This document shows positions 5,887 to 25,777 of a stretch of DNA of 26,081 nt, in pieces; positions within the stretch are counted from its first letter, which is position 1, and every line of letters begins with the position of its first letter. The stretch is from Octopus sinensis (lineage: Eukaryota). The notes under the pieces were generated by a model, which was not told the DNA's origin, ran no database searches, and was given only the letters and a program-made list of their open reading frames with translations. Where the stretch lies: contig NW_021835651.1 of assembly GCF_006345805.1 (NCBI RefSeq), positions 1 through 26,081 on the forward strand, written 5' to 3'. Position numbers and translations under genes: made by a program.

Positions 5887-6087
5887 AACAAAGGTTAAAG
5901 AACAAACAAATGCAAGGTCATCCGCATAACATTTCATAATTCGAACTTTTAATCATAGAATATACATTTAGACATCACGGAAGATGAAACATAATTCATC
6001 TGTACAAGCAATAAGCATATAATAAGGTGCGAGAAAAAAGTTCATTAATCTTTTTTGTTCCTGACAAGAAACAATCACTGTATTATT

Positions 6088-6150
6088 GATATATATATAT
6101 AATATATATAATATATATATATATATATATTATATATAATATATATAATA

Positions 6151-6188
<38 letters not shown>

Positions 6189-6337
6189 ATGTATATGTAT
6201 CTATGTATATGTATGTATATAGATATATGTATGTACACACACATATACATATAGTTCATATACAGTTAAACGAAGAAAAATAGAGAGTAGGAAGTTAATA
6301 TATCATTACAAATTGGTCATCTTTGCTTCTTACATAA

Positions 6338-6377
<40 letters not shown>

Positions 6378-6440
6378 GTATATATTTATATATATGTATT
6401 ATATATATATATGTATATAATATATATGTATATATATATA

Positions 6441-6495
<55 letters not shown>

Positions 6496-6729
6496 GTATA
6501 TATATAATGTATATATATATGTACATATATATGTATATATATATATGTATATATATATTATGTATATTATATAACAGATAAGAGGAAAAATTCTATAAGA
6601 AAGGAACTCTAATCTCTCTTTTATATTTTGATAAGCATAACAAATGCGCAACCGGTAAAAGAACTTTCACCTAATTAAATTACTTAAATTACTTCAATTA
6701 TTTGTCAGCATTTTCTTCATTTCCTTTTT

Positions 6730-6786
<57 letters not shown>

Positions 6787-6807
6787 ATATATATATGTAT
6801 ATATATA

Positions 6808-6853
<46 letters not shown>

Positions 6854-6900
6854 TATATATATATATGTATATATAATATATATATATGTATATATATATG

Positions 6901-6931
<31 letters not shown>

Positions 6932-6950
6932 GCATGTATATACATATATT
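6088..6950. repeat. Large interrupted (TA)n blocks
   Basis: Three TA-rich blocks at about 6088-6250, 6340-6570 and 6730-6950. Confidence 0.95.
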
Positions 6951-8431
6951 ACGCTTTGTTCTTTTTCTTCTTGTTTTCTTCTTCTCTTTCTTCTTTTCCT
7001 TCGTCTCCTCGTCCTCCTCCTACTCTTCCTTTACCTCCTTATTCGTGTGTCTGTCTGTTTGTATTTGCACATATAATAGAAATATAAGGTGTTTTGTAAG
7101 CAGACCATTAGCTTTATTGTTAAAAAACAAAATGTCGTCGTTCATATCACACGATTTCTCTCTCTCTCACTCTCTCTCTGTCTGTGGCCAGTAAAAGATG
7201 TTTGATCTGGTGCTGTTCCTCATTCACCATCACTTCTCCAAATATCGCTTACCTGTCTGGGACCACGAACAGAATATTAAATTTAACTTAATTATTACAT
7301 ATGCAATATTAAATCTAATTAGGTAGGCCTAATTTGCATAACAAAATGCAAGTATTGATAACTCGAATAATTAATTGATATCTATATTGATCTCTCCGCT
7401 GTGCTGTGTGTTTCTGTTCATCAGATAACTTATTAAAGTTGTCAGATAAATTCGTACGGCTTCTTTCTCTTGCACGAAAAAAAAATATTTTGTAACTCTG
7501 CTCTTCCTCTGCAACTTTAGTTTGTCTTTTTGAAATTTGAATAAATGTCACCTTTTTTCAGACATATGACGACAGAGTGGCAAATCTTAAAATATGAACG
7601 AATTTATCTGACAAACTAATATTTGTATATTAATTGATATTAATTCGATAGAAAACCAGTCAGTCGAGAAGCAAGACAATGGAAGATCATGTATAATGAT
7701 GTGTATGAAAAGAAAACAAGAACCACTGTGTGTGTGTGTATGTGTGCGCGCACGCGTGCATGAGTGACAGAGAGAGGGAGAGAGAGAGTATATATCTTTC
7801 TATAATTGTGAGACTTCCTCTAGAGATGGAGAAAATTTCAGCAATCAGGACTTTCTGTTGTATAACATTTGCTGTACCTGTATTTTGTCTATGTTGTTCA
7901 AATGCAAGCCACTGGCCATTCTGAGTTACATGTCCGGGCACAGTTTTAGTTTACACACACACACACACATTATATATAAAGATATACTTTTATATATATA
8001 TATATATAGATGTATATCTTTATATATAATGTAATATACATACATATATTCATACTTACACAAGCACGCACGCACAGACACACACACACACATACACACA
8101 CATTGTTTACGTTATAAGAATTTAGAAACTTCGAAAGAACATGAAATAATTCGTTTTAACGGTCGAACTTGAAGTAGATAAAGCTATAAATAATAACGTG
8201 TGGAAATTGTTTGTATTGTTGTTGTTGTTGTTGTCGTAATCCTTGTTGCTATTATTATTGCTTTCCCTGGTATTTAACCAGAGGGCAGCTCTAATGACCA
8301 AAAAACTCACGATTAAAGGTTGGGTCCTCCTGGAAACATGCCCATATTTTGTTTTTGTAGGTCATCTATCTAGGATTACATCATCCAATATGTCCGTTTT
8401 TTAGAGACGCTAGGGCGTATTGGTTTGTATA

Positions 8432-8788: not shown

Positions 8789-8866
8789 AAGATAATATCT
8801 GTCAACCATGTAAAGAACCCGATACATTCGAAGGTCTTGTAGACAGCTTTTGCCGTGCCGGGGCAG
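8789..8866 (+). CDS. SFRP1/2/5: SFRP1/2/5-like gene, internal coding exon (start of NTR domain), 78 nt, phase 1-1
   Basis: Acceptor tttgctttcAG (8787-8788) and donor GTaagg (8867-8872). Translates xDNICQPCKEPDTFEGLVDSFCRAGA+G, giving the C-x2-C-x13-C pattern of the SFRP1/5 NTR N-terminus (human SFRP1 recalled as CPPCDNELKSEAIIEHLC). Its last G joins the TG at 20213 to give Val in frame with the next exon. Confidence 0.93.
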
Positions 8867-9114
8867 GTAAGGAACAGCATCCAGCTTCTTAAACCCCATT
8901 TTCCTTTCCTTTTCTTTCTCATTTTATTAATTTTTATATTATTTACTATCTTATATTTTATATCATGCATTTTGTTGTCGGAGGCGTCGTTGGTCGTTAC
9001 AAGGTCTCTCAGAAGCCAATCGCTGCTTCATTGACCAGGAATTATAAGGGAGTGTTTGAGAAACTCGGGCCGAAATAAATACCACACAAGGTATTTTCAT
9101 TCGACACACATATT

Positions 9115-9665
9115 ACCAACTTTCTCTATAAACTATGTTACCAAAGACTGTGTCTATCTATAGAATATGCTATCTACAGAATGTGACTATCTTTAATCTG
9201 TGTCTAACTATAGATTGCATCTGTCTATAGTTTTTATCTATCTATAACTGTATTTACAAACTATATCTATCTATCCATCTATCTATCTACCTACTTGCCT
9301 GTCTGTCTATCTGTTATCTTTCCGTCTAACTCTGTATAGATTTGTTTATCTCTAGACCGGTCTATAGACTTATTTACTGAGGATGTCTATCTGTAGACTG
9401 TTTCTATGTAGAGCTTATGATTGTCCATAGACTGTCTCTCTATCCACAGATTTGGTCCGTTTATAGATAATGGCTATTCAGATTTTGTGACTAACCATCT
9501 ATAAACTGTGTATCTACAGACATTTATCTATCCATAGAATGTGTCTATTTATTAACTGTGGTTAGATATTGTGACTGTCTATAAACAGGCATCATGACTG
9601 TATAAACTGCCTTTGTATAGTTCATTTCTATTGACTATCTATAAACTTTCGTCTGTTCATAAGAT
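9115..9665. repeat. Cryptic degenerate minisatellite built on (gtc)TATCTATAGACT-like units
   Basis: Many variants (tctatagaat, tctacagaat, actatagatt, tctctagacc, tctatagact, tctgtagact, tctataaact) recur at irregular spacing; the pattern resumes at about 9825-9865. Confidence 0.7.
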
Positions 9666-9689
9666 GTCACTTATACAGGTGCGGCTTAA

Positions 9690-9790
9690 AATATATGTCC
9701 AGGGGTATTTTGTCCGCCTAAACCCATAAGGACGGTAGCCCAGCGTGGTCGCAGTCCAATAACTGAAACGAGTAAAGGAAACAAAAGTGA
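9690..9790 (+). mobile_element. 3' tail fragment of a SINE
   Basis: gacggtagcccagcgtggtcgcagtccaataactgaaacgagtaaag matches the SINE 3' end at 17970-18013 (18/25 over the core). Confidence 0.65.
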
Positions 9791-9865
9791 AAGGTCTAAA
9801 GACTAAAGCCAAATAGCGTCTTTCCACAGAATCTAACTATCTTTAGACCGTGTCTTTATATAGAC

Positions 9866-10183
9866 CAGGGGTTCTCAACTGAGGCCCATACGACCCTTGG
9901 GGGCCCAAAAGATTTTGTTGTTTAAATTTATGAGCGATAAATTAGTTTTACTTCTACGATACACAAAATATTTTAACAATCTTTTTAAATACAATTCTAA
10001 ATAATATTTAATCTTAAAAATAAAGTAGCCCTTTTCTTCATATACAATGAATGGTCACGAGGGTCCAGTAGAGAAGAGCAGGAATGAAAAGAGGGCATAG
10101 GTAATGAATGGTCACGAGGGTCCAGTAGAGAAGAGCAGGAATGAAAAGAGGGCATAGGTAAAAAAAATAGTTGGGAACCATTA
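9866..10183. mobile_element. hAT (Charlie-like) MITE
   Basis: Imperfect 15-bp TIRs caggggttctcaact (9866-9880) and agttgggaaccatta (10169-10183), 11/15. The 8-bp flanks atatagac and atgcgggc match only 4/8, so any TSD is decayed. No coding capacity. Confidence 0.6.
10047..10160. repeat. Perfect 57-bp tandem duplication inside the MITE
   Basis: atgaatggtcacgagggtccagtagagaagagcaggaatgaaaagagggcataggta occurs at 10047-10103 and 10104-10160. Confidence 0.95.
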
Positions 10184-10550
10184 ATGCGGGCTGTAGTTTT
10201 CTACAGATTATGCCAAGCTACGGGCTGTCGAAACGTAAATTCTCTCTCTCTCTCTCTCTCCACAAACTCCATATCTCTGATATTACCAACACACTGTATG
10301 ACCTCCTCTCCTGGCGACGGAGTTAGAAACAGCAATAACAAAAAGTTTTTAAAAAAAGAGAAAAGAAAAAAAGAAATGAAAAAACATAAAAAAGCAACGC
10401 AAAAAATACTCTCACTTTTCTCCTCCATTTTCAATGTGAATGAACTTCGTTCATGCGACAGCAAAAAAACAACGAAGCAGACAGATAACTGGTTGGGTGG
10501 GGGTCGGGTGGAGAGGCGGGGGTCGGGTGAGGCAGTGAAAAACAGTGTAG

Positions 10551-10634
10551 TGGCGTCGGCGAGATTCGAACGCAGTGCTACACGATTTTAAGTGTCATAC
10601 TTGACACAATGACAGCTTATCAATTGACCGAAGC
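10551..10634 (-). pseudogene. Degenerate tRNA-like sequence (pseudo-tRNA or SINE head)
   Basis: The minus strand has a perfect B box (gttcgaatc), a weak A-box-like ggtcaattgataag, a cttaaaa loop and a ...cgacgcca end. The T and anticodon stems do not pair properly. Confidence 0.35.
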
Positions 10635-10654
10635 AAAAGTCGTAAACAACCTGT

Positions 10655-10686
10655 CACTTGCACACACACGCACGCTCACACACACA

Positions 10687-10726
<40 letters not shown>

Positions 10727-11478
10727 TACACTCACGGACACACACACACACACGCCACATACACACACGTACACACACACACGTACGCACACGCCACATA
10801 CACTCTCACACACATACACATATGCACACAGGCACACAGACATTCACACACATTCGTACACATTGAGGCACATACGCGCGCACGCACACACACACACACA
10901 CGCACCTAGCACAAAAATCCGTGCCCCCGCTACACACACATCACACATACCGATATACGCGCACGCATGTACACACACACATACACATAAGCACACATAT
11001 AACACAACACACATCTAAATACGTATGCATATCATCATCATCATCGTTTTAATGTCCAAAATCTCTTACACACGTGCGCACTCACAGACGTACACACGCA
11101 CACACACGCACTTGCATACAGACACATATATGCTTGCGCTCACATAGAAACAAACGCATAAACACACACACACATACACACACACACACACAGATAGCGC
11201 ACATGCATCTCCAAACCTCGAACATACACAACCACTGCGCACGCGCGCTGATCTGCTCAAATTTCATCCGACCCCACAACTACCCTCCACACACACACAC
11301 ACACACAGGTCCCCACCACCTCCTCCTCCTTTACCGACGCCCCTTTCTTCCCCATCACTTTCAAGGCCACCATCTTTCCATTAACATTCACTCAGCAAAT
11401 ACGTGGATACTGCTAACATCGCAAAACACAAGCGCACACACACACAACACACCATACACAGAGACACACATACACACA

Positions 11479-11553
<75 letters not shown>

Positions 11554-11605
11554 CAGAGTCACACACGCCGCCCTTGCACACACACACACACACACAGACA
11601 CAAAT
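10655..11605. repeat. Extended degenerate (CA)n/(TA)n region
   Basis: Direct inspection. Confidence 0.9.
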
Positions 11606-11639
11606 GACCTCGTCCTTCCTTCTGAGCCGTGCCCCATGG

Positions 11640-12500
11640 CGGAAGGGGTAAATCCAGAAACTCCTTTACAAACCTTACAGAAATATATAATACACTACAC
11701 TCCGCCAGCATACATTTCTACATACATTCTCCAAGATCCCTGCCAAACAAACGCAGTGATAACCGATGAAGAGGCAAGAGGAAAGAAAAGTCTCGGCTGT
11801 GCTCAACAGCACCTCCTCAACAAAGCTGTCCTTAAGGAAGCCAGCAACATTGCCATAACCGTCTTTGCGATATTGCTAGATTACAAGGAAGCGTTCGATT
11901 CTTGCCCCGTGAGTGGATAATAGAATCACTACATCTTGCTAAAGTACCAGCTGCTATCGGGAATGCCATTGAAAGACTGACCCCAGCATGGTCCACATAA
12001 TTATCACTGACAACTACTAGAGCAAAACCTATTGTCACAAACAGAATTAAGCTATCAACAGGGTGACAGTCAATCCAGGGTGATAGTCTATCTGTAATGC
12101 TGTTTTGTACTGGTAGTGAGTCCTTTGTCAGCCCTGTTAACAAATAACAAGGCTACATGCTAAGATATGCAGAAAAAAATTAAGTTAATGTTGCTCACAA
12201 CATTTTTTGTTAATTACTTAAAGCTATATTTTTGGTAAAATGACCAAAATCAAGGAACAATTAGAAATAGTCGCAACATTCACATGAGATATAAGAATGG
12301 AGTCTGGGCAAGATAAATGCTCGTACGTGTCAACCGAGGAAAGGTTGTCGACCAGGCAGAGAACATGTACATCAATGGCTTGTCTGCCTCCTCTATCTCT
12401 AATGACGAAAGCTACAAATACCTTGGAATCGATGAGGATGTTGCATATGTTGGTGCTGTGACTAAAGCCAGAATAATAAAAGAGTTCTGTAGAACATAGG
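11640..12500 (+). mobile_element. Decayed non-LTR retrotransposon RT fragment, R4/Dong-like (RLE type)
   Basis: Frameshifted pieces: GCAQQHLLNKAVLKEA, LDYKEAFDS, WIIESLHL, IQGDSLSVMLF, TFFVNYLKLY (catalytic DD mutated to NY), DIRMESGQDKC and ESYKYLGI. These follow the order of RT motifs typical of R4/Dong-like elements. Confidence 0.85.
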
Positions 12501-13039
12501 TCAGAAGATACTTCAAACAATGAGACCGTTGGGCGGAATGGAACCCATGTCTGTGCGGCCAAGAAGTTTGCGTCTTAGTTTCGTTGTTTTGGGGTCAACT
12601 ATTGCATGACGACGCTTTGGGTGGTCGTCTGAGATGGAACCAGGTCTTGTGTGTGTGAAACTGTGTCGATGGGAACTGTCCCACGCTTTCATTTAGTGGA
12701 CCCAATATTATAACAACTTAAGGTTGAAGGGATCTGTCAAGTTTTGTGATTTACTTATCTCATAAGCACCGGTATAGGAACGAGGGTCAAATAAATGTAA
12801 ACTGCGAATTTGTATCTCACCGTAAGCGGAAGCATAACCAGCAGCAGAATGTATGAGAAGGGATAACAGCATCATCCTGTAGAGATGGAATCAACTGTGT
12901 GTCTCCATTTATTTTAATCGTAGAATATAAATGGATAAAAACAACAACAAAAAAACCCCCAGACGAGTCCACACAAAACTCATACATGCCATGTGACTGC
13001 GGTTTTAAATTATTTAAACAAATGTACAGCATTTGCTAT

Positions 13040-13280
13040 ATATTGATTAGGAGTTCAATACACGACAGATCACAACTGATCAATAACTTGCCGAAAAGCC
13101 TTAAATATCTCTAAAGTGTAGACGGGTTCAATTTTTAGAAAAGGCAGTAAGAGAAATTTTTATCTGAGATAATAGAAGGACTTACTCTTCGCCAAGAAAC
13201 GCAAGTGAGGGCAAAACCGAAGACGGAGATGTGGTGTGAAAATGGATTCAGAATTACACAAATGGTGGACACATCCTCCG
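13040..13280 (+). mobile_element. Degenerate CR1-type LINE 3' fragment
   Basis: cacaactgatcaataacttgccgaaaagccttaaatatct (QLINNLPKSLKYL) parallels cacaactgatatgtggccgaaaaacctaagagatct at about 17286-17325; downstream spacing is similar. Confidence 0.5.
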
Positions 13281-13345
13281 GTTGGACCAAATACAAATGT
13301 GTGTGTGTGCTCGTGTCTGAGTGTGTGTGTGTGTTTGTATGTGTG

Positions 13346-13403
<58 letters not shown>

Positions 13404-13594
13404 GTCGTCATAAGAATTTAGAAACTTTCGAGAGAACATGAAATAATTATCTTTTGGAACGGTGAGTCTCGAAGCACACAAAGCTTTAAACAAAAACGCG
13501 TAAAATATTGGGTTAAAAACCATTTGAGTAGAAAAAGGTGAAGGTAGCGTTCGATGTTTTCTGTTGCAAGGGTGCGTCTGAGGATTGCCTGTCA

Positions 13595-13643
<49 letters not shown>

Positions 13644-14405
13644 CATAACTACACACACACAGATACACACACACATCTTTGTCCAAATCTCTCTTCTTCT
13701 TGCTTCTCCCCCTCCTCCTCCCCTCTTCCTCTCTTTCCCCTCACCCCCGCCCGCCCGTCGTTCCACCCTTAAATATCCGACCCTACCTTTTAATTCCTCA
13801 CCTGACATCTCTGCGTGTCATGCGCTCAGTTTTCCAATTGACACGTCGTTATGGTTCACACACACACCACCACCACCACCACCACCACCGTCACCACCGC
13901 CACCACCACCATTAACACCACCACCACCGCATTCATCCTCGCCCTCCACCTCCCTCTCCACATCCCATTATATCTCCTTCCCCGCCCTCCATCACACCAT
14001 CTAGCAATATTTAGCCACCACCACCACCATCATCCCTCACCCCTGTCCAATCTTGTCAATTGCAGTTTAAATCTAGACACATGCACGCATGTGCAATATG
14101 CACGCCATGCACTCATGCACATGGAAATGCACCCGGGGCTGAACTGCCAAGTTTTCTATTTCACTTCGTGCACCGCCGATGTGCACATTGACTCCGGCCA
14201 CGTAAGGCTGTTCTGGCGGGAATAGTGGGGTGTGGTGGTGGTGGCGATGATTGTTGTTGTTACTGTTGTTTTAGCCCCAGGTCAGCCCTAATTGAACAGG
14301 TCTAATACACACAGTTGAATGACAAGGAACGACCTACACTCATATTTAAACATTCATACAAGCATCCATCCATCCATCCATCCAATCCATCCATCCATAC
14401 ATACA

Positions 14406-14436
<31 letters not shown>

Positions 14437-14444
14437 GCATACAA

Positions 14445-15029
14445 AAGAATTTATTGAACTACATTTCTCAGCTCCAGGTCGTTGTCAAAGGAAACGCGTC
14501 GCAGACAAAGGGAGAGCGACCCAAAAACGTGGTAATCTGAAGGCGATATATATCTGAAGAATATGTCGGTAGTGGCAGACCTGACCAACTGAACTCATGA
14601 ATAGCAATTTTGGTCAAAATAGCGGCGTGGGAGAGGAGCGTTGTCATGTTGAAGAAACACGGGTGAAGGTGGCAGATAACAGTATCTTGGGACCAATCCA
14701 TCTGCTTGACCAATTCCCTGGTGGATTGGCGAGGATCCTCGTGGATGTGCTTGTTGAACTGAACAGGTCGACCGGGGTGCGGAGAGTCTGTGAGGTCGAA
14801 TTATTCCTTCTTGAAGCGTGAAAACCGTTTCAGTACATTTTTTTCAGTAATAGCGTAAAATTATGTCTTAAAAGAGGTAAAATTTATTCAAATTTCAAAA
14901 ACAATAAACAAAAGTTGTTGAGAAAGAACAGAGCTACAGCAAAGAAACCATAAAACACAACGATAAAAATGTTTTTCGTCTTAATCCAAAACACATTGGT
15001 CAGAAAGGAATTTATCCGAAAACCCAGTA
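14445..15029 (-). mobile_element. Internally deleted, frameshifted mariner (DD34D) transposon relic
   Basis: The minus strand encodes FSRFKKE*FDLTDSPHPGRPVQFN..HEDPRQSTRELVKQMDWSQDTVICHLH (HTH region), then LQHDNAP, and LPTYSSDI/SPSDYHVFGSL (YSPDLAPSDYHLF motif). A mariner-like terminus TA|CTGGGTTTTCGGATAAATT sits at about 15009-15029. The other TIR was not found. Confidence 0.88.
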
Positions 15030-15399
15030 GAAAACTGTACAGTTATGTATATGAAAGCCTTTGGCCATGGAGATTCCTGACGATGTGGAAACATTCTATT
15101 GCTCTTTTCAATATACAGAAAAATAGTAGGATACCCGAGAGGGGAATGCTAGCTATGGTTCCCCTGCCTTCTTTTCTCGTATATCTCATTCAGTATTAGC
15201 TTATCTCGCATAGTTAACTATTTTGTAAGCGTTTGTGTAAAGTTTGAAAAAGATTTGGTTGTTACTTTTAACAGAGTGAGCGACCGCGTAGATATCTCTG
15301 TCGTTGGTTTCTGTTGATTGTTGCTGTTGTTGTTGGAGGCGAGAGAAAAATCCTTAAATTTACAAACTGATTATTACGCAGCTTGTATTAAATTAAATT

Positions 15400-15470
15400 T
15401 GTTTAAGGCTTCAGAAATGGAGATCCGACGGGTCTCTGGAGCAACGTTGCTCGACAGGGTCTCTTGGAAG
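15400..15470 (+). mobile_element. Possible short RTE-type LINE ORF remnant
   Basis: LFKASEMEIRRVSGATLLDRVS resembles the recalled post-RT motif (A.EM..LRRI.GVT..DRVRN). Too short to be sure. Confidence 0.35.
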
Positions 15471-15550
15471 CCAAAGGGTCTCTACTTCTCAGAATTCACA
15501 GGTCACGGCTCCGCTACAGCAGACACGTGATTAGACAGACAGAGAGACAG

Positions 15551-15591
<41 letters not shown>

Positions 15592-15818
15592 CACAACACA
15601 CGCACGCACACACACACACACACAAACACACGTGCAGTCGTTAATTAAATCAAGTTTTCTCTCCAATTTTTTTCCCTGTCTCTCTTTTCTTTCTTTCTGT
15701 AGAAGAGCGTAGGCTCGAAACTCCAGAGATTTCCTCCATTTTTCCTGAGCGCCAAACTAAAACACCGTGTTTGTTGTTCCTCGTTTGTTATTTTATGCTT
15801 TTAGTATAATTTTGAACG

Positions 15819-15819
<1 letters not shown>

Positions 15820-15882
<63 letters not shown>

Positions 15883-15972
15883 TATATATATATATACATA
15901 TATATCGAGCGTTAAACTAATACATCTGTTTGTTGTCTACATCACCAGTCTTCGTCTTTTTTTTGTGAATTC

Positions 15973-16022
<50 letters not shown>

Positions 16023-16384
16023 AACATACATACACACATATGTATATATATATATGTATATACATATGTGTATACACACAAGTACATACACATATATATG
16101 TGTGTATATATATATGTATATATGTATATATATAAACATATACATATACTCACACATATACATATACACACACATATACATATACACACACATATACATG
16201 TACACTCACACGTATCAATTACTGGTGCGTTAAGAGTGTTTTGTTTCAATACTATCATCTTTCTATCAATGCAGGTATCACATATACAGGCAATGGGTTT
16301 ACAAATATTCAGTGTGAGTGTGTATGTGGTATATATATTCATATCTGTATGGTGTATGTGTTTGGCGTGTGTACGCGCGCGTGC

Positions 16385-16482
<98 letters not shown>

Positions 16483-16510
16483 GCCGACAGACAGACAGAC
16501 ATACACTTAA
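15820..16510. repeat. (TA)n/(CA)n/(GA)n/(CAGA)n cluster
   Basis: Direct inspection. Confidence 0.9.
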
Positions 16511-16839
16511 ACACAGACACACATATATTTTTATCTACGTACAGTTAAACAAACACATAAAGATTTACGTTGGCCGCTGCTTTGAATATCGTGTTCTGAT
16601 ATTTATTGGGAGTTTTTTAACAAAGCAAGTCCTTAAGAGATGCTGTCTCACGACAGATGCTACAGTTGTTGGCCTATCGACACTGTGTATAGAATAAGTA
16701 TAAGGCATAGGTGGTTATATAAATGTACATATACATATACATCCAAACATATACACCCATACACACACACACACACGCACGCACACGCATGTGTTTGTAT
16801 GAACATAGAAGATTCTGGAACGGTTGACACCAATCTTTA

Positions 16840-17505
16840 GTGTCAAGAGTTAAAAAGTCGATGTTGGCCGCAGAGTGTCCTCATGGATCCTCAGAGCTTT
16901 TCAATCTAGGGGTCATGAAACCATCATCCTTCTCTTCTCCACATTCGCAAGGCCCCATCTCGAATACTGTTGCCCGTTGTGGTCTCCTTACAAAAGAAAA
17001 ATTCCTCCAGGAAATACCGGATAAACCACCTACACCTAGATACGTCTCAACCAACAGCAACTCACTGCTTGAGTGGTCCATGCTGTCCCGAAATAATTAA
17101 CTAGAAGCCTTTTCCAGGCGGTGTTATTGAGTTACTCATGGCCTAGGCCGATAATGTCCGAAACCAATCTAAGTTATCTAAATTATACCAACACCCGAAC
17201 AAGACGCCACTGCACAGTAGCAAAGGCCCTAACCATCCTGTCTATAGTAAGGATCCGCTCTACAATAACTTGGGTTTGAAGGGTACACAACTGATATGTG
17301 GCCGAAAAACCTAAGAGATCTACATAGAGTAAGGCTAGATGTTTTCAAGCAGCACGTGGGCCTTCTGCTGTCCAAGGTCCCAGGTGTACCTCTTTGACGA
17401 CAAGGGACTCACATGCGAGCAGCAATATCAAAAGCCAACCATAGAAGAATGCTCATTGAAAAGATTACGAAGATGGCAGTGCTCCAACATGGTCGCAGTG
17501 TTTAC
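16840..17505 (+). mobile_element. CR1-type LINE 3' portion (ORF2 C-terminus plus 3' tail), decayed
   Basis: SWILRAFQSRGHETIILLFSTFARPHLEYCCPLWSPY is the typical CR1/L2 post-RT motif (RPHLEYC...WSP). A later piece reads NLGLKGTQL...LRDLHRVRLDVFKQHVGLLLSKVPG. Stops and frameshifts are present. Confidence 0.88.
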
Positions 17506-17509
17506 GCTG

Positions 17510-17683
17510 GAGCGCAAAGTTTGCATCCCAAGTACATGGTTCTGGATCCAGGCCCATTGATGTCACCTTCTACTATAACCCCGAGTCGACCAAAGCCTTG
17601 AGAGTGAATTTGGTAGACAGAAACTGAAAAAAGCCTCTCGTATATATATATATATATATATAAGATTTATATATAATATATAG

Positions 17684-17742
<59 letters not shown>

Positions 17743-17767
17743 ACACATATATATATATTTCTGGGTG

Positions 17768-17823
<56 letters not shown>

Positions 17824-18013
17824 ATTTGTCCTCCAGCACAGCTTGACAACCCGTGTTGGTTTGTTTACGTGCCCGTAATTCAGCGGTTCGGCTAAAAGAG
17901 AAAGATAGAATAAACATCAGACTTAACAAATGGAATACTGCGGTCGATTTGTTCGACTAAACTCCTCAAGGCAGAGCCCCAGCATGGCCGCAGTCTAATG
18001 ACTGAAACAAGTG
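17510..18013 (+). mobile_element. Composite SINE: tRNA-like head, V/MER6-like domain, internal (TA)n(TG)n, Nin-like domain, CR1-like tail
   Basis: Segments in order: acatggttctggatccaggccc; ttctactataaccccgagtcgaccaaagccttgagagtgaatttggtagacagaaactgaaa; a microsatellite (about 17640-17820); cttgacaacccgtgttgg...agcggttcggc...gatagaataa...ggtcgatttg; ggcagagccccagcatggccgcagtctaatgactgaaacaag. Domain names are from recall. Confidence 0.88.
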
Positions 18014-18249
18014 ACGTACATATAAAATACAATTCTGTTTGTCGATATAACGAAGAGCTTCGCGAAAGGCTGCGACCGAACGACAGTGTGTCCTCGCCCC
18101 CCGTCACACATCTATTCTTAATATATTGGACGTCGTATCCTCTTCCAATGTATCGCGTCATCACCAGTATTTCTACACATATCACGTGTACACTGATGGT
18201 GTTTTACATGTCTCAGGTGACCAAGCCCCAGTTTAGATTTATAGACTTA

Positions 18250-18570
18250 CTAGCAGTATCGCCCGGCGTTGCTCGGGAATAGTGAACATTTTTCTGGTTG
18301 AAATACACTGAAAAATGGCGACACAGCAGACAAAAAATCGTAAAAAATAGGGATTTTCATAGAAAAAAAGCACCTTTTTGATGTAAATAATTTTTGGTGT
18401 TAACATGGTCTGATTTGAATATTTTCTTCTATGGAAGGAAGAGCAAGCCTTCTTCTATTATACTCTCAATTTTGGTCAACTTGCGCCGCAGGGTCTCGGA
18501 GGAGATAGTGTTAGTTGAAGGCTACCAAACCTGTCATACACAGACAACTTCAGCTTTATATATATAGAGA
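18250..18570 (-). mobile_element. Non-autonomous Helitron (321 bp)
   Basis: The minus strand starts TC and ends CTAG, inserted between A and T with no TSD. A GC-rich subterminal hairpin cccgagcaacgccggg (plus 18262-18277) lies 8 nt before the CTAG. Confidence 0.85.
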
Positions 18571-18599
18571 TATCCTCACATTATTTTTGTGGCTCCCGT

Positions 18600-18936
18600 C
18601 GTTGTGTTGCGGTCAAGCTGTAGCACTTCTTTGCTTTAGATTCTTTTTTCGTTTTGTTAGATCAATTACGTATCGACGCCTGTAGTGTTTCATTTGTTAT
18701 TTACTTTATTGATCTCTATCGATTAAATTATCATATGGAGTTATCGCACTTTAGGAAATAAATATAACACGTGTGTGTGTTTCTTTCAGTTTCCGTCTAT
18801 CAAATCCACTCGCAGAGCCTTGGTCGACCCGAGGTTATAATAGAAAACACATATCCACGGTGTAAGGCAGTAGAACTGAACTCAGAACCATTTGTTTGGG
18901 AAACAAGCTTCTTACAACACAGCTACACCTGCGCCT
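18600..18936 (-). mobile_element. tRNA-derived SINE related to 17510-18013, opposite orientation
   Basis: tttcagtttccgtctatcaaatccactcgcagagccttggtcgacccgaggttataatagaa is the reverse complement of the V-like domain. The head ends ...cagctacacctgcgcct; a tail remnant gcggtcaagctgtagcac lies at about 18608-18626. Confidence 0.8.
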
Positions 18937-19592
18937 TTAGGAAAAATATGGAACGCTTTATGAATTTGAGTGTCAAAATGAAAAAACAATTTCATAATAA
19001 CATTCGAAAAAAAAAAATGAAACTTTGCAAAGTAAAATAAAAATATAAAAAAGGAGAAAAAAAACAGCCAATAGCTCTTTGTTTATGTTAAAAGCCAGAA
19101 GGCCTTCAAGTAGTGTTTGGCGGTATAAATATTTGGCAGATATAAAGTATTGGCTGTTATTTCTTCCTTTTAATATATTTTTATTTAATTTTCGGTGGTT
19201 TTTTTTTTTTTTATAATATTGCTCTGATATTGTTTTTGCATCTTGATCTACCTATAGGCGCAGTTGTGGCTGCAGCAAAACAAAATATGATTCAACTCAG
19301 GTATTAGACTTTAAAAGCTAATTTACCTTGTAAAAAGAAATGTTTAAGAGATAAATTAAACAAGAATTCGAACTTTAAACCGGTCTAAAAAAAACTCTAA
19401 ACCAGATCACTCATATAAAAGCAGGAGTAAACAACAAATCTTCCATATCACGGACTTTCCGTAATATGGAAAATTGTGGGATTATGAATATAAATAGTAA
19501 GAATATTATTTAATATTTTATGGCTTGGTTGAGTTAATATCGTTTGGAGTTGATGAAGTTGTGGGTGTTTCTATCTCTAACACTATTTTGAT

Positions 19593-19625
<33 letters not shown>

Positions 19626-19921
19626 GGATAATAAAATGAATGGTTTACGCCTGGTAGCTTATTGGTAGCTTCTAAATATATAAATGAAAAATTCTCCTCC
19701 GCCTGGCTGCTTTTCTCTCTACAAAACAGAAAGTTGCAGTGTGGAACAGTCATTTTAAGGATATTATTTATTTATCACCCGACGAGATACATCTGCACCA
19801 CCGGATACACCTGAACCAGTTGTTGAGTGACCCACAAGAGGAGTCGATGTATCGAAACAATTGTTGTGATTAATAATATATTCTCGTATATTCCATCTTC
19901 TGTCTTTCATTTTGTTATTTA

Positions 19922-19958
<37 letters not shown>

Positions 19959-20212
19959 TATATAGATAGATATAAACATAGATATACTCTTAATTGAATA
20001 ATAGCAAAACAATGTTCACGTCCAATAATTCCTTACATATCTATTTCTGTTTGCATCTTTGCTTGCGTGTATGTATGTATGAAATTTGTGTGTTTCTCTT
20101 TTTTTCTCTTTTTTTTTTTTGTCTGTCCTCTTCTAGCTTTTCAACAACTTACTATATTTCTTTCTCGCTCTCTCTCACATACACTCTTTTCTCTTTCTTT
20201 GTCTTCTTTCAG

Positions 20213-20730
20213 TGTTCCGTGTAACGGTGGACAGTGTGAACGCAGAAAATGGCTACCTACGAGTGAATTTCATGCGGAAGAAGCGAGCGTACAAACGTGG
20301 TTCGCTGGTGAAGAAACAGATCCGAAAATTAGCTGGTTACATTCCGGTGACCAACAAATGCGACTGTGCTAAGAACAATGCTTCTTTGATCGCTCCAAAG
20401 AAGAGGCTTCTAGTGATGGGCCGCATGGAGCAAGATAAATTCCTTCTTTTTTTCGTTAGTCCATATCAGAGAAAATCGGAAGGTTTCCGAGCGGCGACGA
20501 AAATGTGGAAGAAAGATAACCCATGCAAATCGTGGGCCATACCGGATGTGTATAACCGGGACAAGACAGAGAAAAAGGAGAAGAACAAAACGGATAAAAA
20601 GAGGAACAGGAACGACAAGAAGAATCGCAAGAAGAAGAAGAAGAGGAGGAAGAAGAAGGGATCGAAGAAGAGGAACAAGGATAGAAAGAAGTCGAAAAAA
20701 GGCAATGAAGTATCTCCTCCCTCTCAGTGA
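20213..20730 (+). CDS. SFRP1/2/5: SFRP1/2/5-like gene, terminal coding exon (rest of NTR domain plus Lys/Arg-rich tail)
   Basis: Long polypyrimidine tract and AG at 20211-20212, phase 1. Reads VFRVTVDSVNAENG...YKRG...KCDC...LLVMGR...FLLFFVSPY...F...MWKKDNPC, which aligns with recalled SFRP1 (FALRMKIKEVKKENG...LKLG...DCPC...FLIMGRK...YLLTAI...F...MKNHEC). Six NTR cysteines across the two exons. Stop TGA at 20728-20730. Confidence 0.93.
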
Positions 20731-20774
20731 TCTGAAGTCGACATTTTATAATGGGGGTCCATCAAGTTGAGTTA

Positions 20775-21012
20775 CATGTATGTGTATACATATATGTGTA
20801 TATGATGTATGTATCTGTGCAATTACATACATATATATACACATATACATATATATATATAAATACAGATGTACATATACACATATACATACATGCATAT
20901 ATACATACATATATATAAACACACGTACATATATATACATACACACGCACATACGTATATATATATGTATATACATATAGACTGACAAACAGATAGATAG
21001 ATAGATAGATAC

Positions 21013-21076
<64 letters not shown>

Positions 21077-22747
21077 TTACAGACGAACGCCTTCGAAGAA
21101 TTATGATAGGATTAAAACGATAATAGCAACAGACGACGACGACGACGATGAGCACGATTATGAGAAAGAAAGAGCAAATACAATATCAATGATGATAACA
21201 ACAACAACAACAACAATAATAATAATGCGGGTGATGTTAACATGAATTATTAGTAAGCAAGACACTGACAGTGGTATTGAGAATAAGAGACAGAACCACC
21301 CACAACTGCGACAAGAAGAACAACCAGTGGCTATGATGGACGTTGGTAGTAATGGCAAAGGACGAGAACAACAACAGCAGAAACAACAGCATATCCCCCC
21401 ACACACACTCACAAAGACAATAACAACAACAACAACAAATATGTTAGTAAAAATATTAATTAATCGTAACGTTAATCAAGAGTTTGTGAGTAGACAAATG
21501 GCTCTTATGATGACAGTGACGACGATGATGATGATGACGATGATGATGATGATGGTGACGACGACGACGGTGTTGGTGGTGGTGGTGGTGGTGGTTTACC
21601 GAAATCTACGTCCTCCCCGCCACACATAAAAATACAATACATACAAACACGCACACGCACGCACATGCGCACACACATATATACACAGACGATGGTGATG
21701 ATGATGATAAAGATAATCATGATGATGATGATGATGATAAAGATAATCATGATGATGATGATGATGATAAAGATAATCATGATGATGATGATGATGATGC
21801 AATATTGATGATGTTGTGATACTGAGGTTGCTGTTGAAGAAGAGGAGGAAGAGGAGGAAGTGGAGGTGGTGGACGATAATGACTGCGAGATTGATGCCGT
21901 TGGTGGTGCTGGTGATGATGATGATGATGATGATAATGATGTCGATTCGACGCCGATGCTGGAGAGGAGGAGGAGGAGGAGGAGGAGGATTTGAGGGCTG
22001 TCAATTCGTTAATTGAACAATTACCATTTTTTGCGATGACATGTCATGTCTGCAGAATTGGTTTCCGATTCGGGGTAGGTTTCGGGGTGGGTAGCGAGTC
22101 ATTGCACTTTCTCATTGTTTATCTTAGTGCCACCGGTAAAAGTACCCTTGGCCCCATCGCTGTGATGTAAGGAGAGTGAGGGTGGGGCATAGTTAAGGGT
22201 GCCTTCCCCTTCGCTCTCCTTAACCTTCTCCAGGTCGTGCTCTCCTGAAATCCCTCAACCCTCACTTCCTCTTCCTCTACCTTCTTCCACCACCACCACC
22301 ACCACCACCGCAATCTTCCACCACACCCCTTACCTTCCCGAACCTTCCTTCTCCCCCCCCCGCACCCTGCCACCCTACTCCAACCCAGTCTCCTCCATTT
22401 TCCTTCCCCATCACAACAAACGCATTCTTCTTAATCACTTCTCCACGCATTAAATAACTCTCGCCACTGTCAATACCTCCACTATCACCACCACCACCCC
22501 ACACACACACCATCTCCACCAACACCACCATCACCATCACCAACACCACCGCCACCACCGTCGCCAACACCATCTCCACCAACACCACCATTCCAACACC
22601 GAGGCCACCACCATCACCCCTACCATCGTCGTTTTCACCGTCACCCCACTGACACCAACAAAAACATGTCGTCACTCCCATCAGCAATATCACCACCATT
22701 ATTGTACCCCGCTTCCATTACTATCATCATCGTCATCATCATCTTCG

Positions 22748-24790: not shown

Positions 24791-25777
24791 CTCATAGAAG
24801 CTACACCAACCATCGCCGCCTCGACAATAACGACGTATATGACTGGAATTACACACTAAACAAACAGCAACATACGTCATAACGTGGACATAAAGTTTAA
24901 ACGCATAAGAAGACTAAAGACACATATGACTAATGTCTAAGACAGAGACAAAACAGTTTGATCTTGCTGTACAAGCAGTTATGACAAATACCGAACGTCA
25001 TAAAGAAGACATCATAATACACATATACATATGTGTACAAATACACACACGGGCGAACACACAGGTACACAAACATACACACAACACATGGGTATAAATG
25101 AAATTTTAAAACAAATAATTCTTTCTACGAGGACAATATTTGAATATTTGACACTTAAAGAAAAAAAAAATTAAGACACACGCTATGGAAGACATGAAAA
25201 TAATTTTACACATGCTTGGAACGGTGTTAACAGTCGAAAGCGCCTACATATATATATATAATATATATATATATTTAGATGAATATGATTGAGGCATCAG
25301 AATTTAGTACGGTATTATTCATACAATTTCAAAGTAAGGTGATTAAAATCAAAATAAGCAACAAGGATATCCTTGTTGCTTAGTTTGATATATATATATA
25401 TATATATATATATACTCTTCATATCTTTCAGAAGCTCTGTGTTAATCTGAGATTTTAAAGAGATTTTTAAAGATAAATTTTAATTAAAAAAGGATGTTTT
25501 TTTAAAATATATGTTTTATATATAACTGACGTCATAATATACATAAAATAATAAAATAACACGGACGCAAATATTTGAATCATTTTTTTTTTTAGAAAGT
25601 AAAAAATTCTGTAAAAAATCATGATGAAGGTAGTATTATATTCACAATGGGGTGGCGGAATGAAAGGTAAATGAAAAATAATAATAAAAGTCCCAAAATA
25701 TGCAAAAACTTGGTATTAAGCAGACATGCCACTCTGTCTAGTATCTCCTGCTTTCCACCTTATAATTTCACTAGAAG

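What the first reader, a model, noticed from the sequence alone, without database searches (positions are those of the whole stretch)
20527..20730. SFRP with a 67-aa C-terminal extension containing a 49-aa polybasic stretch (32 K/R, 6 D/E)
Seen: after the last NTR Cys the frame continues KSWAIPDVYN-RDKTEKKEKNKTDKKRNRNDKKNRKKKKKRRKKKGSKKRNKDRKKSKKG-NEVSPPSQ. It uses mixed AAG/AAA/AGG/CGC/AAC codons rather than a pure repeat and stays open throughout. Known: vertebrate SFRP1/2/5 end within about 10 residues of that Cys, and SFRPs bind heparan sulfate, which shapes Wnt distribution. Inference: the tail is a strong heparan-sulfate or membrane tether that makes this Wnt modulator short-range. Alternatively it is an NLS/NoLS-like signal or a cleavable peptide (dibasic KR/RR sites), possibly derived from an exonised (AAG)n tract. 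Its many Lys codons are also potential A-to-I recoding targets.
Basis: partly seen in the sequence, partly recalled or inferred. Interest (0 to 1): 0.7.

Follow-up and report, generated by a model that had tools for sequence, protein, structure and literature searches.

The report
Basic tail on an Sfrp1/2/5 gene
The lysine-rich tail is a real, conserved end of a secreted Wnt-antagonist gene (Sfrp1/2/5), but equally basic tails occur in its counterparts in snails, oysters, worms and arthropods, so it is typical of invertebrates and absent only from vertebrates.

Summary
Window 20527-20730 (+) encodes 67 residues after the last NTR cysteine, including a 49-residue block with 24 K + 8 R and 4 D + 2 E.

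It is the 3' end of the last coding exon (20213-20730) of an Sfrp1/2/5 orthologue. Exon 2 lies at 8789-8866. The CRD exon is outside the window.

The closest relatives (71-73% identical) carry a homologous tail with a shared GSKK(R)NKD core and a PP-containing end. In them, short RNA-type contigs read straight through CRD-NTR-tail. Tail dN/dS is about 0.14-0.15, against 0.06-0.08 for the NTR. AlphaFold models a confident NTR fold and a disordered tail.

The tail is not special to this lineage:
- 43 vertebrate SFRP1/5 proteins end 8-16 residues after that Cys with 0-1 K/R.
- Named molluscs, annelids, a nemertean, a brachiopod, a priapulid, chelicerates and insects almost all carry K/R-rich tails or linkers.
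- Haliotis, Pinctada and Saccostrea reach 33-34 K/R in 49 residues, as many as here or more.

A heparan-sulfate retention role, possibly with polybasic ER export, is plausible but untested. I found no paper describing the tail. Interest is low to moderate.

The parts
8789..8866 (+). Exon 2 of the Sfrp1/2/5 gene. It encodes (E)DNICQPCKEPDTFEGLVDSFCRAGA, the first three NTR cysteines. Acceptor tttcag|AAGAT, donor GCAG|gtaagg, phase 1 at both ends.
   Evidence: tblastn of P0002 against the window: 71% identity, E 7e-12. Splice-site sequences and coordinates. The frame joins exon 3 as G|TG = Val, matching RADA-V-FRVTV in the spliced relatives.
8867..20212 (+). Intron 2, about 11.3 kb and rich in microsatellites. 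Its last ~165 nt (20049-20211) are pyrimidine-rich.
   Evidence: Bounded by the exon 2 donor and the exon 3 acceptor. Only exon 3 is conserved with the related genomic contig L001.
20213..20526 (+). Exon 3, the NTR-domain part (FRVTVDS...KKDNPC). It holds the CDC pair and the last NTR Cys (TGC 20524-20526), and the internal polybasic motif KKRAYKR.
   Evidence: 71-73% identical to P0001/P0002. The six NTR Cys are invariant in a 30-sequence alignment. AlphaFold block-mean pLDDT is 84-96 across most of the domain (one 10-residue block at 70), and the best PDB fold hits are Sizzled, C345C, TIMP and PCOLCE NTR.
20527..20556 (+). Short spacer KSWAIPDVYN between the last Cys and the basic block. IPDVY is conserved in the close relatives.
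   Evidence: Alignment of the window with L001, L003 and L004.
20557..20703 (+). Polybasic block of 49 residues: 24 K + 8 R, 4 D + 2 E, net charge about +26, pI 11.5. Includes an (AAG)10-like core at 20629-20658 and six overlapping BBBxxBB motifs.
   Evidence: Modelled as disordered (block-mean pLDDT 50-61, no secondary structure). The homologous GSKK(R)NKD core is shared with relatives, and tail dN/dS among them is 0.14-0.15.
20704..20730 (+). Non-basic C-terminal cap NEVSPPSQ plus the TGA stop (20728-20730).
   Evidence: Similar Pro/Ser/Thr ends follow the basic block in other molluscs: Saccostrea ...NVVSPPS, Haliotis ...SATTPSP, close relatives ...KPPTN.

Best explanation
[quoted passage not shown] After the last NTR cysteine the protein continues as an intrinsically disordered tail of net charge about +25, ending in a short Pro/Ser cap. 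This tail is the normal architecture of protostome SFRP1/2/5 and is missing only from the vertebrate paralogues surveyed.

Most likely mechanism (inferred): the tail acts as a multivalent electrostatic binding module for sulfated glycosaminoglycans. It adds to the already basic NTR (+14), so the secreted protein, and any Wnt bound to its CRD, is held on heparan-sulfate proteoglycans of the cell surface and matrix near the producing cells. This would sharpen or localise Wnt inhibition or presentation. The same BBBxxBB clusters could also serve earlier in the pathway as polybasic ER-export signals of the SURF4 type described for human SFRP1.

Shown here: the sequence, the gene structure, presence of the tail in spliced transcripts of relatives, purifying selection, predicted disorder, and phylogenetic spread.

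Inferred: glycosaminoglycan binding, range restriction, ER export, and protection of the tail by the non-basic cap.
For: - Exact translation and composition; exon 3 acceptor and exon 2.
- The closest relatives P0001, P0002 and P0040 carry a homologous 66-68-residue tail with 28-31 K/R.
- Logan contigs of 1.8-4 kb (L002-L006) contain one uninterrupted ORF through signal peptide, CRD, NTR and tail. The genomic gene has an intron of more than 11 kb, so these are spliced transcripts.
- Nei-Gojobori dN/dS among three relatives is 0.14-0.15 for the tail and 0.06-0.08 for the NTR.
- AlphaFold gives a confident NTR and a tail at pLDDT 50-61 with no secondary structure. Foldseek's best PDB hits are Sizzled and NTR-type domains (C345C, TIMP, meteorin, PCOLCE1).
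- K/R-rich tails or linkers occur in 19 of 20 NTR-search hits and in nearly all protostome SFRP1/2/5, whereas 43 vertebrate SFRP1/5 have 0-1 K/R.
- Six overlapping BBBxxBB motifs lie in the tail and one in the NTR.
- Literature: the sFRP2 NTR mediates HSPG-dependent cell-surface binding (bioRxiv 10.64898/2026.02.09.704138). Lower NTR charge of sFRP4 is linked to weaker heparin affinity and longer transport (PMC12505536). Polybasic stretches of human SFRP1 drive SURF4-dependent ER export (PMC9731852). The R-spondin basic region binds HSPGs (PMC7239654).
- The longest A run is 6 or fewer in all four tails despite 20-24 Lys codons, consistent with a sequence that must be translated through.
Against: - No binding, localisation or range data exist for any tailed SFRP.
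- No transcript from the window's own species was found, so inclusion of the tail there rests on relatives.
- The CRD exon is not in the window.
- Tail sequence is poorly conserved between the window and its relatives apart from a short core (tail dN 0.5-0.6), as expected for composition-driven but also for weakly constrained sequence.
- Some family members lack a terminal tail: a tick protein, and heterodont bivalves where the basic stretch is an inter-NTR linker. A terminal position is therefore not essential.
- Vertebrate sFRPs bind HSPG without any tail.
Confidence: 0.6

Rival explanations
1. The tail's main job is inside the secretory pathway. It is a polybasic ER-export signal captured by a SURF4-type cargo receptor, and extracellular glycosaminoglycan binding is secondary.
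For: Human SFRP1 needs its lysine-rich stretch (aa 223-245, containing (K/R)(K/R)(K/R)XX(K/R)(K/R)) for SURF4 binding and efficient ER-to-Golgi transport (PMC9731852). The window tail has six overlapping matches to that motif and the NTR has one, KKRAYKR.
Against: The conserved internal NTR motif should already suffice for export, as in vertebrates. A 49-residue block is far more than the 7-residue signal. The two roles are not exclusive: in the Shh model, proteoglycans take over from SURF4 in the Golgi.
Confidence: 0.15
2. The tail is weakly constrained low-complexity sequence kept long by AAG/AAA replication slippage, with no specific function.
For: There is an (AAG)10-like core. Relatives differ by Lys indels, for example KKKKKK versus KKKKKKK in P0028. 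The tail is not alignable at nucleotide level between the window and L001. Tail dN is roughly twice that of the NTR.
Against: dN/dS is 0.14-0.15, well below 1. The GSKK(R)NKD core and Pro-containing end are conserved. A basic tail persists across molluscs, annelids, a nemertean, a brachiopod, a priapulid and arthropods. Codons are mixed, with A runs of 6 or fewer.
Confidence: 0.1
3. The tail is a removable pro-segment. Proprotein convertases or basic carboxypeptidases clip it to release a more diffusible SFRP, and possibly a cationic peptide.
For: The tail holds many dibasic KR/RR/KK sites. Retention motifs of PDGF and VEGF and the semaphorin-3 tails are regulated this way (my own knowledge, not checked here).
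Against: There is no furin consensus R-X-K/R-R in the tail; the only match, RKKR, is inside the NTR. The non-basic Pro/Ser cap would hinder stepwise trimming by basic carboxypeptidases. No shorter protein forms are documented.
Confidence: 0.07
4. The tail is an NLS/nucleolar-type signal serving an intracellular (nuclear) role of the SFRP.
For: The K/R clusters resemble classical NLSs. Nuclear sFRP4 binding beta-catenin and DNA has been reported (review PMC12505536).
Against: Orthologous full-length proteins start with a hydrophobic signal-peptide-like segment and ten-Cys and six-Cys disulfide domains typical of secreted proteins. Vertebrate sFRPs reported in nuclei have no such tail.
Confidence: 0.05
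5. The tail is not translated in this species. Transcripts end or splice before it, and the open frame is an accident of T-poor sequence.
For: No transcript of this species was available. The purine-rich tract is open in two frames.
Against: The homologous tail lies in frame in spliced transcripts of two relatives and in a third genome. No GT[AG]AG donor occurs in 20501-20735. The stop position and Pro-containing end are conserved.
Confidence: 0.03

Closest known systems
Protostome SFRP1/2/5 orthologues in public databases (e.g. Haliotis rubra P0059, Pinctada imbricata P0039, Saccostrea cucullata P0052, Owenia fusiformis P0007, Lingula anatina P0046)
   Same: CRD + NTR followed by a K/R-rich tail after the last NTR Cys. 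Tails run 36-87 residues, with 33-34 K/R in the best 49-residue window in Haliotis, Pinctada and Saccostrea. Molluscs often share a Pro/Ser end; Saccostrea ...NVVSPPS compares with NEVSPPSQ here.
   Different: The tail sequences are not alignable beyond composition. GK-type repeats dominate in oysters and abalone, against K/R/N/D here. Some bivalves, gastropods and horseshoe crab have a second NTR after the basic stretch.
Cuttlefish Sfrp1/2/5 (Sepia bandensis MK756072; Tarazona et al. 2019, PMC6581508)
   Same: Probably the same gene in a related lineage: a Wnt antagonist expressed dorsally in limb buds. That paper notes the octopus orthologue was mis-annotated as Frizzled1.
   Different: Only a partial cDNA and its expression were reported. 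The C-terminal tail is not mentioned. I could not compare sequences because none is held in the supplements.
Vertebrate SFRP1 / SFRP5
   Same: Same domain order, the same six NTR cysteines and the same internal lysine-rich NTR stretch (KKRAYKR here; aa 223-245 in human SFRP1). NTR-mediated heparin/HSPG binding.
   Different: They end 8-16 residues after the last Cys with 0-1 K/R. The basic charge is confined to the folded NTR.
R-spondin TSP/basic-region tail
   Same: A secreted Wnt-pathway modulator whose C-terminal polybasic region binds heparan-sulfate proteoglycans and thereby changes signalling (PMC7239654, PMC5800842).
   Different: An unrelated protein family (furin-like repeats + TSP1). 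It potentiates rather than antagonises Wnt signalling. HSPG acts there as a co-receptor for ZNRF3/RNF43 clearance.
Cardin-Weintraub / polybasic motifs of Hedgehog, BMP8A and SFRP1 (SURF4 clients)
   Same: The (K/R)(K/R)(K/R)XX(K/R)(K/R) clusters are present six times in the tail. Dual use for ER export and proteoglycan binding has been proposed (PMC9731852).
   Different: Those motifs are single short clusters inside or beside folded domains, not a 49-residue disordered block.
Xenopus Sizzled (PDB 5XGP, 7EL5)
   Same: It is the best structural match of the modelled NTR and an sFRP-family protein with CRD + NTR.
   Different: Only 13-16% sequence identity over the aligned region. It is usually described as a tolloid inhibitor rather than a Wnt binder (my own knowledge). 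Its C-terminus was not examined here.

Membership tests
SFRP1/2/5 subfamily of secreted Frizzled-related proteins | N-terminal Frizzled-type cysteine-rich domain (Pfam Fz, PF01392) | tested here: inconclusive
   tblastn of the full-length relative P0002 finds exons 2 and 3 but no CRD in the window, so exon 1 must lie upstream of position 1. The 73%-identical orthologue P0002 and P0040 carry PF01392 at E 2e-26.
SFRP1/2/5 subfamily of secreted Frizzled-related proteins | C-terminal NTR module with six conserved cysteines (CxxC, C, CxC, C) | tested here: met
   C5, C8, C22, C76, C78 and C131 of the exon 2+3 product are invariant across 30 SFRP1/2/5 sequences, vertebrates included.
SFRP1/2/5 subfamily of secreted Frizzled-related proteins | NTR fold (OB-like beta-barrel with flanking helices) | tested here: met
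   In the AlphaFold model 97 of 198 residues have pLDDT of 90 or more, and block means across the domain are mostly 84-96. Foldseek top PDB hits are Sizzled, C3/C5 C345C, TIMP-1/2, meteorin NTR and PCOLCE1 NTR, E 3e-5 to 1e-3.
SFRP1/2/5 subfamily of secreted Frizzled-related proteins | Match to the Pfam NTR profile (PF01759) above threshold | tested here: not met
   No NTR hit for the exon 3 product, the exon 2+3 product or P0002, even at E up to 10. The Owenia and Saccostrea orthologues do hit it (E 2e-13 and 3e-11). This lineage's NTR is divergent in sequence but not in fold.
SFRP1/2/5 subfamily of secreted Frizzled-related proteins | Closer to SFRP1/2/5 than to SFRP3/4 | tested here: inconclusive
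   Every named SFRP among the 120 best profile hits is called SFRP1, SFRP5, SFRP1-like or SFRP5-like, apart from one Aplysia 'frizzled-related protein 2'. These are source names, and no tree including SFRP3/4 was built.
Heparin/heparan-sulfate-binding polybasic tails (Cardin-Weintraub type) | Clusters of basic residues matching BBBxxBB or XBBXBX | tested here: met
   Six overlapping BBBxxBB matches and one XBBXBX (EKKEKN) in the tail; net charge about +25, pI 10.95.
Heparin/heparan-sulfate-binding polybasic tails (Cardin-Weintraub type) | Measured binding to heparin/HS and HS-dependent cell-surface retention | not testable with these tools
   Needs heparin chromatography or heparinase experiments. 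Only shown for vertebrate sFRP NTR domains in the literature.
SURF4-dependent polybasic ER-export cargo | (K/R)(K/R)(K/R)XX(K/R)(K/R) motif on a soluble secretory protein | tested here: met
   Motif present in the NTR (KKRAYKR) and in the tail. Motif definition from PMC9731852. Dependence on SURF4 itself is not testable here.
Furin/proprotein-convertase-cleaved C-terminal retention tails | R-X-K/R-R cleavage consensus at or in the tail | tested here: not met
   A regex scan finds RKKR only inside the NTR, at residue 48 of the exon 2+3 product, and none in the tail.

The most novel reading that the evidence does not exclude
A disordered polybasic C-terminal tail, or inter-NTR linker, is an ancestral and selectively maintained part of protostome SFRP1/2/5. 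It sets how far this Wnt modulator travels by binding heparan-sulfate proteoglycans. Vertebrates lost it, leaving only the basic NTR. On this reading, invertebrate Wnt gradients would be shaped by a much 'stickier' sFRP than the vertebrate models suggest. The tail has apparently never been described or tested.
Probability: 0.4. Interest if true: 0.5.

Novelty: new member of a known kind. Interest (0 to 1): 0.3.

Why it matters
Models of how sFRPs shape Wnt gradients come almost entirely from vertebrate proteins that lack this tail. If the tail governs matrix retention, then invertebrate Sfrp1/2/5, used as a marker and presumed Wnt antagonist in cuttlefish limb, spider, myriapod and annelid studies, may act over a much shorter range, or present Wnt on HSPGs differently. 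The practical points are modest:
- The gene is an ordinary orthologue.
- Its NTR escapes the Pfam profile, which may explain past mis-annotation.
- The tail is a ready-made, easily deletable element for testing charge-dependent range control.

Tried and rejected
- Pfam and PDB sequence searches with the exon 3 or exon 2+3 product gave only spurious low-complexity hits. The NTR assignment had to come from homologues, the Cys pattern and the fold.
- An exact look-up of the window's own 172-residue ORF in public assemblies found nothing, so there is no same-species transcript evidence.
- Stop-codon A-to-I editing was suggested by the variants ending PPTNWL instead of PPTN. It is rejected: the contig DNA reads TGA TTA TAG and 'translates_to_query' is 'no', so the gene caller read TGA as Trp.
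- A specific intron-exon dsRNA as an editing substrate is rejected as sequence-specific. The pyrimidine-rich intron end pairs with the purine-rich tail at -79.8 kcal/mol, but shuffled introns do the same (mean -79.5), and the related genome lacks the pyrimidine tract.
- The furin-cleavage idea fails: no consensus in the tail.
- Recent exonisation of an (AAG)n tract is rejected because the tail is shared across phyla.
- ORFs inside intron 2 and elsewhere gave no Pfam domain, and no tRNAs were found.
- The supplements of the cuttlefish paper hold accession numbers only, no sequences.
- The third large homologue search was not spent. The tool lists only the best 120 hits and cannot be aimed at echinoderm, hemichordate, amphioxus or cnidarian SFRPs.
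- The taxon of the window and of its unnamed closest relatives could not be established with the tools.

Full report
**1. Observation**

It reads KSWAIPDVYN, then a 49-residue block with 24 K, 8 R, 4 D and 2 E, then NEVSPPSQ and a TGA stop. The preceding TGC (20524-20526) is the last cysteine of the domain.

Codon use is mixed: AAG 19, AAA 6, AGG 5, AAC 5 and others. Tandem Repeats Finder also reports an imperfect (AAG)10 core at 20629-20658.

The open frame alone proves little. The tail DNA is only 7% T, and a second frame is open over the same stretch.

**2. Gene context**

The frame opens at a canonical acceptor (ttcag|TG, exon start 20213). A second exon lies at 8789-8866 and encodes (E)DNICQPCKEPDTFEGLVDSFCRAGA. 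It has an acceptor tttcag|AA and a donor G|gtaagg. It joins exon 3 in phase 1 to give ...RAGA-V-FRVTV..., exactly as in spliced relatives.

Intron 2 is about 11.3 kb. No CRD-coding exon is in the window, so exon 1 lies upstream of position 1.

No GT[AG]AG donor occurs within the tail-coding region. The first polyadenylation-like hexamer downstream of the stop is at 21111.

**3. Identity of the domain**

Pfam does not recognise the exon 3 or exon 2+3 product, nor the NTR of the full-length relative. Three other lines of evidence assign it:
- An exhaustive HMMER search with the tail-less 115 residues found 20 proteins. Nineteen are SFRP-like NTR regions.
- A profile search returned more than 1000 SFRP-type proteins. 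Nearly all named proteins among the best 120 are called SFRP1, SFRP5 or '-like'.
- The six NTR cysteines are invariant across a 30-sequence alignment that includes vertebrate SFRP1/5.

An AlphaFold model built on that alignment gives high confidence for most of the domain (block-mean pLDDT mostly 84-96). Its best PDB matches are Xenopus Sizzled, C3/C5 C345C, TIMP-1/2, meteorin NTR and PCOLCE1 NTR.

So this is an SFRP1/2/5-type NTR that is divergent in sequence. A cuttlefish Sfrp1/2/5 has been cloned and is expressed dorsally in limb buds. The same paper says the octopus orthologue was mis-annotated as Frizzled1 (PMC6581508).

**4. Is the tail real coding sequence?**

The closest relatives carry a homologous tail of 66-68 residues with 28-31 K/R. 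They are:
- P0001, on a 264-kb genomic contig (L001);
- P0002 and its cluster;
- P0040.

In the genomic relative, nucleotide similarity with the window starts at the same splice acceptor.

P0002 and P0040 sit on Logan contigs of 1.8-4 kb. There a single ORF runs from a hydrophobic, signal-peptide-like N-terminus through CRD and NTR to the tail and stop. With an intron of more than 11 kb in the gene, these contigs can only be spliced transcripts. Intron-retaining fragments in the same cluster mark the exon 1/2 boundary.

The four tails align with a shared core, RRKKKGSKKRNKD here against RRRKGSKKNKD, and a Pro-containing end.

| Comparison (three close relatives, Nei-Gojobori) | dN/dS |
|---|---|
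| Tail | 0.14-0.15 |
| NTR | 0.06-0.08 |

Synonymous sites are near saturation, so these values are approximate. Between the window and the relatives dS is saturated in nearly every comparison.

The model places the tail at block-mean pLDDT 50-61 with no secondary structure. No exact match to the window's own ORF is on record, so expression in this species is inferred.

**5. Is it unusual?**

No. For every retrieved protein I counted the residues after the aligned last NTR Cys and after the protein's final Cys.

| Group | n | Residues after last Cys | K+R in tail | Max K/R in 49 residues |
|---|---|---|---|---|
| This window | 1 | 67 | 33 | 32 |
| Closest relatives (P0001, P0002, P0040) | 3 | 66-68 | 28-31 | 26-29 |
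| Named molluscs | 17 | median 75 | median 27 | up to 34 |
| Annelids, nemertean, brachiopod | 4 | 38-117 | 12-34 | 12-23 |
| Priapulid | 1 | 102 | 28 | 21 |
| Insects | 5 | 50-81 | 9-15 | 9-15 |
| Vertebrate SFRP1/5 | 43 | 8-16 | 0-1 | 0-1 |

Among molluscs, Haliotis rubra reaches 34 K/R in 49 residues, and Pinctada, Saccostrea and two other Haliotis species reach 33.

Spiders, scorpions and a myriapod carry tails of 47-101 residues with 11-15 K/R. In the three horseshoe-crab isoforms, as in Mercenaria, Mya and Mactra, the basic stretch links two NTR domains and there is no terminal tail. A tick protein lacks the tail.

The window's tail is therefore at the high end of a general protostome feature. 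Even its ending (NEVSPPSQ) resembles the oyster's (NVVSPPS).

The second half, 'already described', I could not confirm. Full-text searches for SFRP with lysine-rich, polybasic, basic-residue or tail terms found no description of it. Neither did the cephalopod and panarthropod sFRP papers.

**6. Mechanism**

The exon 2+3 NTR already has net charge +14. The tail adds about +25 (pI 10.95) in a flexible segment, with six overlapping BBBxxBB clusters.

In vertebrates:
- The NTR is the part of sFRP2 that binds cell surfaces in a heparan-sulfate-dependent way (bioRxiv 10.64898/2026.02.09.704138).
- Lower NTR charge in sFRP4 is linked to weaker heparin affinity and longer transport (PMC12505536).
- Polybasic stretches of SFRP1 bind the ER cargo receptor SURF4 (PMC9731852).
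- Within the Wnt pathway, the R-spondin basic region is a C-terminal HSPG-binding element with signalling consequences (PMC7239654).

By analogy I commit to a glycosaminoglycan-binding retention tail as the most likely function (about 0.6). It may also double as an ER-export signal.

Two smaller inferences follow:
- The non-basic Pro/Ser cap would protect the tail from basic carboxypeptidases.
- The preference for AAG, with A runs of 6 or fewer in all four species, fits avoidance of poly(A) tracts that stall ribosomes. That stalling effect is my own knowledge, not checked here.

None of this is shown experimentally.

**7. Rivals**

- An export-only role is possible, but the internal NTR motif should already suffice.
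- Neutral slippage-driven low complexity is contradicted by dN/dS far below 1 and by persistence across phyla. Slippage clearly does modulate length: K6 versus K7 variants and the (AAG)10 core.
- Convertase processing lacks a furin consensus in the tail.
- An NLS role conflicts with a secretory, disulfide-rich protein.
- Non-translation is contradicted by the relatives' transcripts.

**8. Editing**

The only variant that looked like recoding was a stop read as Trp, giving PPTNWL. It is an artefact. The contig DNA has TGA, and the tool reports that the locus does not translate to the query.

The pyrimidine-rich end of intron 2 can pair with the purine-rich tail-coding RNA. In the minimum-free-energy fold, 95 of 147 tail bases pair with it (-79.8 kcal/mol). 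Shuffled introns do equally well, and the related genome has no such tract. So this is a compositional effect, not evidence of an editing site.

**9. Verdict**

The gene is an ordinary member of protostome SFRP1/2/5. What remains of interest is that a conspicuous, conserved, easily testable polybasic tail seems never to have been examined, in a family whose range-setting behaviour is debated. Whether it is ancestral to bilaterians was not tested, because no non-vertebrate deuterostome or cnidarian sequences were retrieved.

Noticed in passing
Relatives P0004/P0036 (Batillaria), P0006 (Littorina), P0016, P0043, P0045, P0047 (Mercenaria), P0054/P0066 (Mya), P0055 (Mactra), P0073-P0077 (Tachypleus): Many bivalve, caenogastropod and horseshoe-crab SFRP1/2/5-like proteins have CRD + NTR + basic stretch + a second complete NTR. 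In heterodont bivalves the basic stretch is only a linker and there is no terminal tail. This looks like a tandem NTR duplication that I have not seen described.
   Followed up: partly
L002 1740-1752 and L003 1565-1576 (relatives); proteins P0022, P0033, P0034, P0035: Cluster members ending PPTNWL instead of PPTN looked like A-to-I editing of the stop codon. The contig DNA reads AAT TGA TTA TAG, so the extension comes from gene calling with TGA read as Trp, not from editing.
   Followed up: yes
window 20049-20211 versus 20557-20697: The pyrimidine-rich 3' end of intron 2 is predicted to pair with the purine-rich tail-coding RNA (-79.8 kcal/mol; 95 of 147 tail bases pair with the intron in the MFE fold). 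Shuffled introns give the same energy, and L001 lacks the tract, so the effect is compositional only.
   Followed up: yes
window 19916-19958 and 20824-20941: TA/TACA microsatellites flank exon 3 in the intron and just after the stop. They are mutually complementary (arms of 35-43 nt, 72-87%), so the pre-mRNA could bracket the exon in a long-range duplex. This is probably just self-complementary TA repeats.
   Followed up: no
window 20991-21076, 21132-21148, 21197-21216, 6001-7000 and throughout: The window is very rich in microsatellites: about 16% of bases lie in runs of 1-6-nt units. Examples are (AGAT)21 just downstream of the gene, (GAC)n, (AAC)n, and a 1-kb stretch of 15.5% GC.
   Followed up: no
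window exon 2+3 product; P0002, P0040: The NTR domains of this protein and its closest relatives fall below the Pfam NTR (PF01759) threshold. The Owenia and oyster orthologues pass it. This may contribute to mis-annotation; the octopus orthologue was reported as annotated 'Frizzled1' (PMC6581508).
   Followed up: partly
P0031 (relative, Logan contig): One transcript-derived variant ends prematurely (…EEETEEKNKE) just where the A-rich Lys run begins. This looks like a one-base slip in an A run, from assembly error, sequencing error or transcriptional slippage.
   Followed up: no
P0050 (Mytilus edulis SFRP5) and P0168 (Ornithodoros turicata): These are exceptions to the basic tail. The M. edulis model switches to an acidic/hydrophobic C-terminus after the shared spacer (net -14), possibly a gene-model error or an alternative last exon. 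The tick protein ends 6 residues after the last Cys.
   Followed up: no
window 25388-25433 versus L001 6720-6761 (opposite strand): A 46-bp, 87%-identical match between the window and the related genomic contig lies outside the gene. It may be a shared repeat or small conserved element.
   Followed up: no
window 20590-20598 (NKT in the tail); P0002 tail NKS: An N-glycosylation sequon sits inside the basic tail here and in one relative, but not in L001 or P0040. If used, a glycan within the polybasic block could modulate its binding.
   Followed up: no
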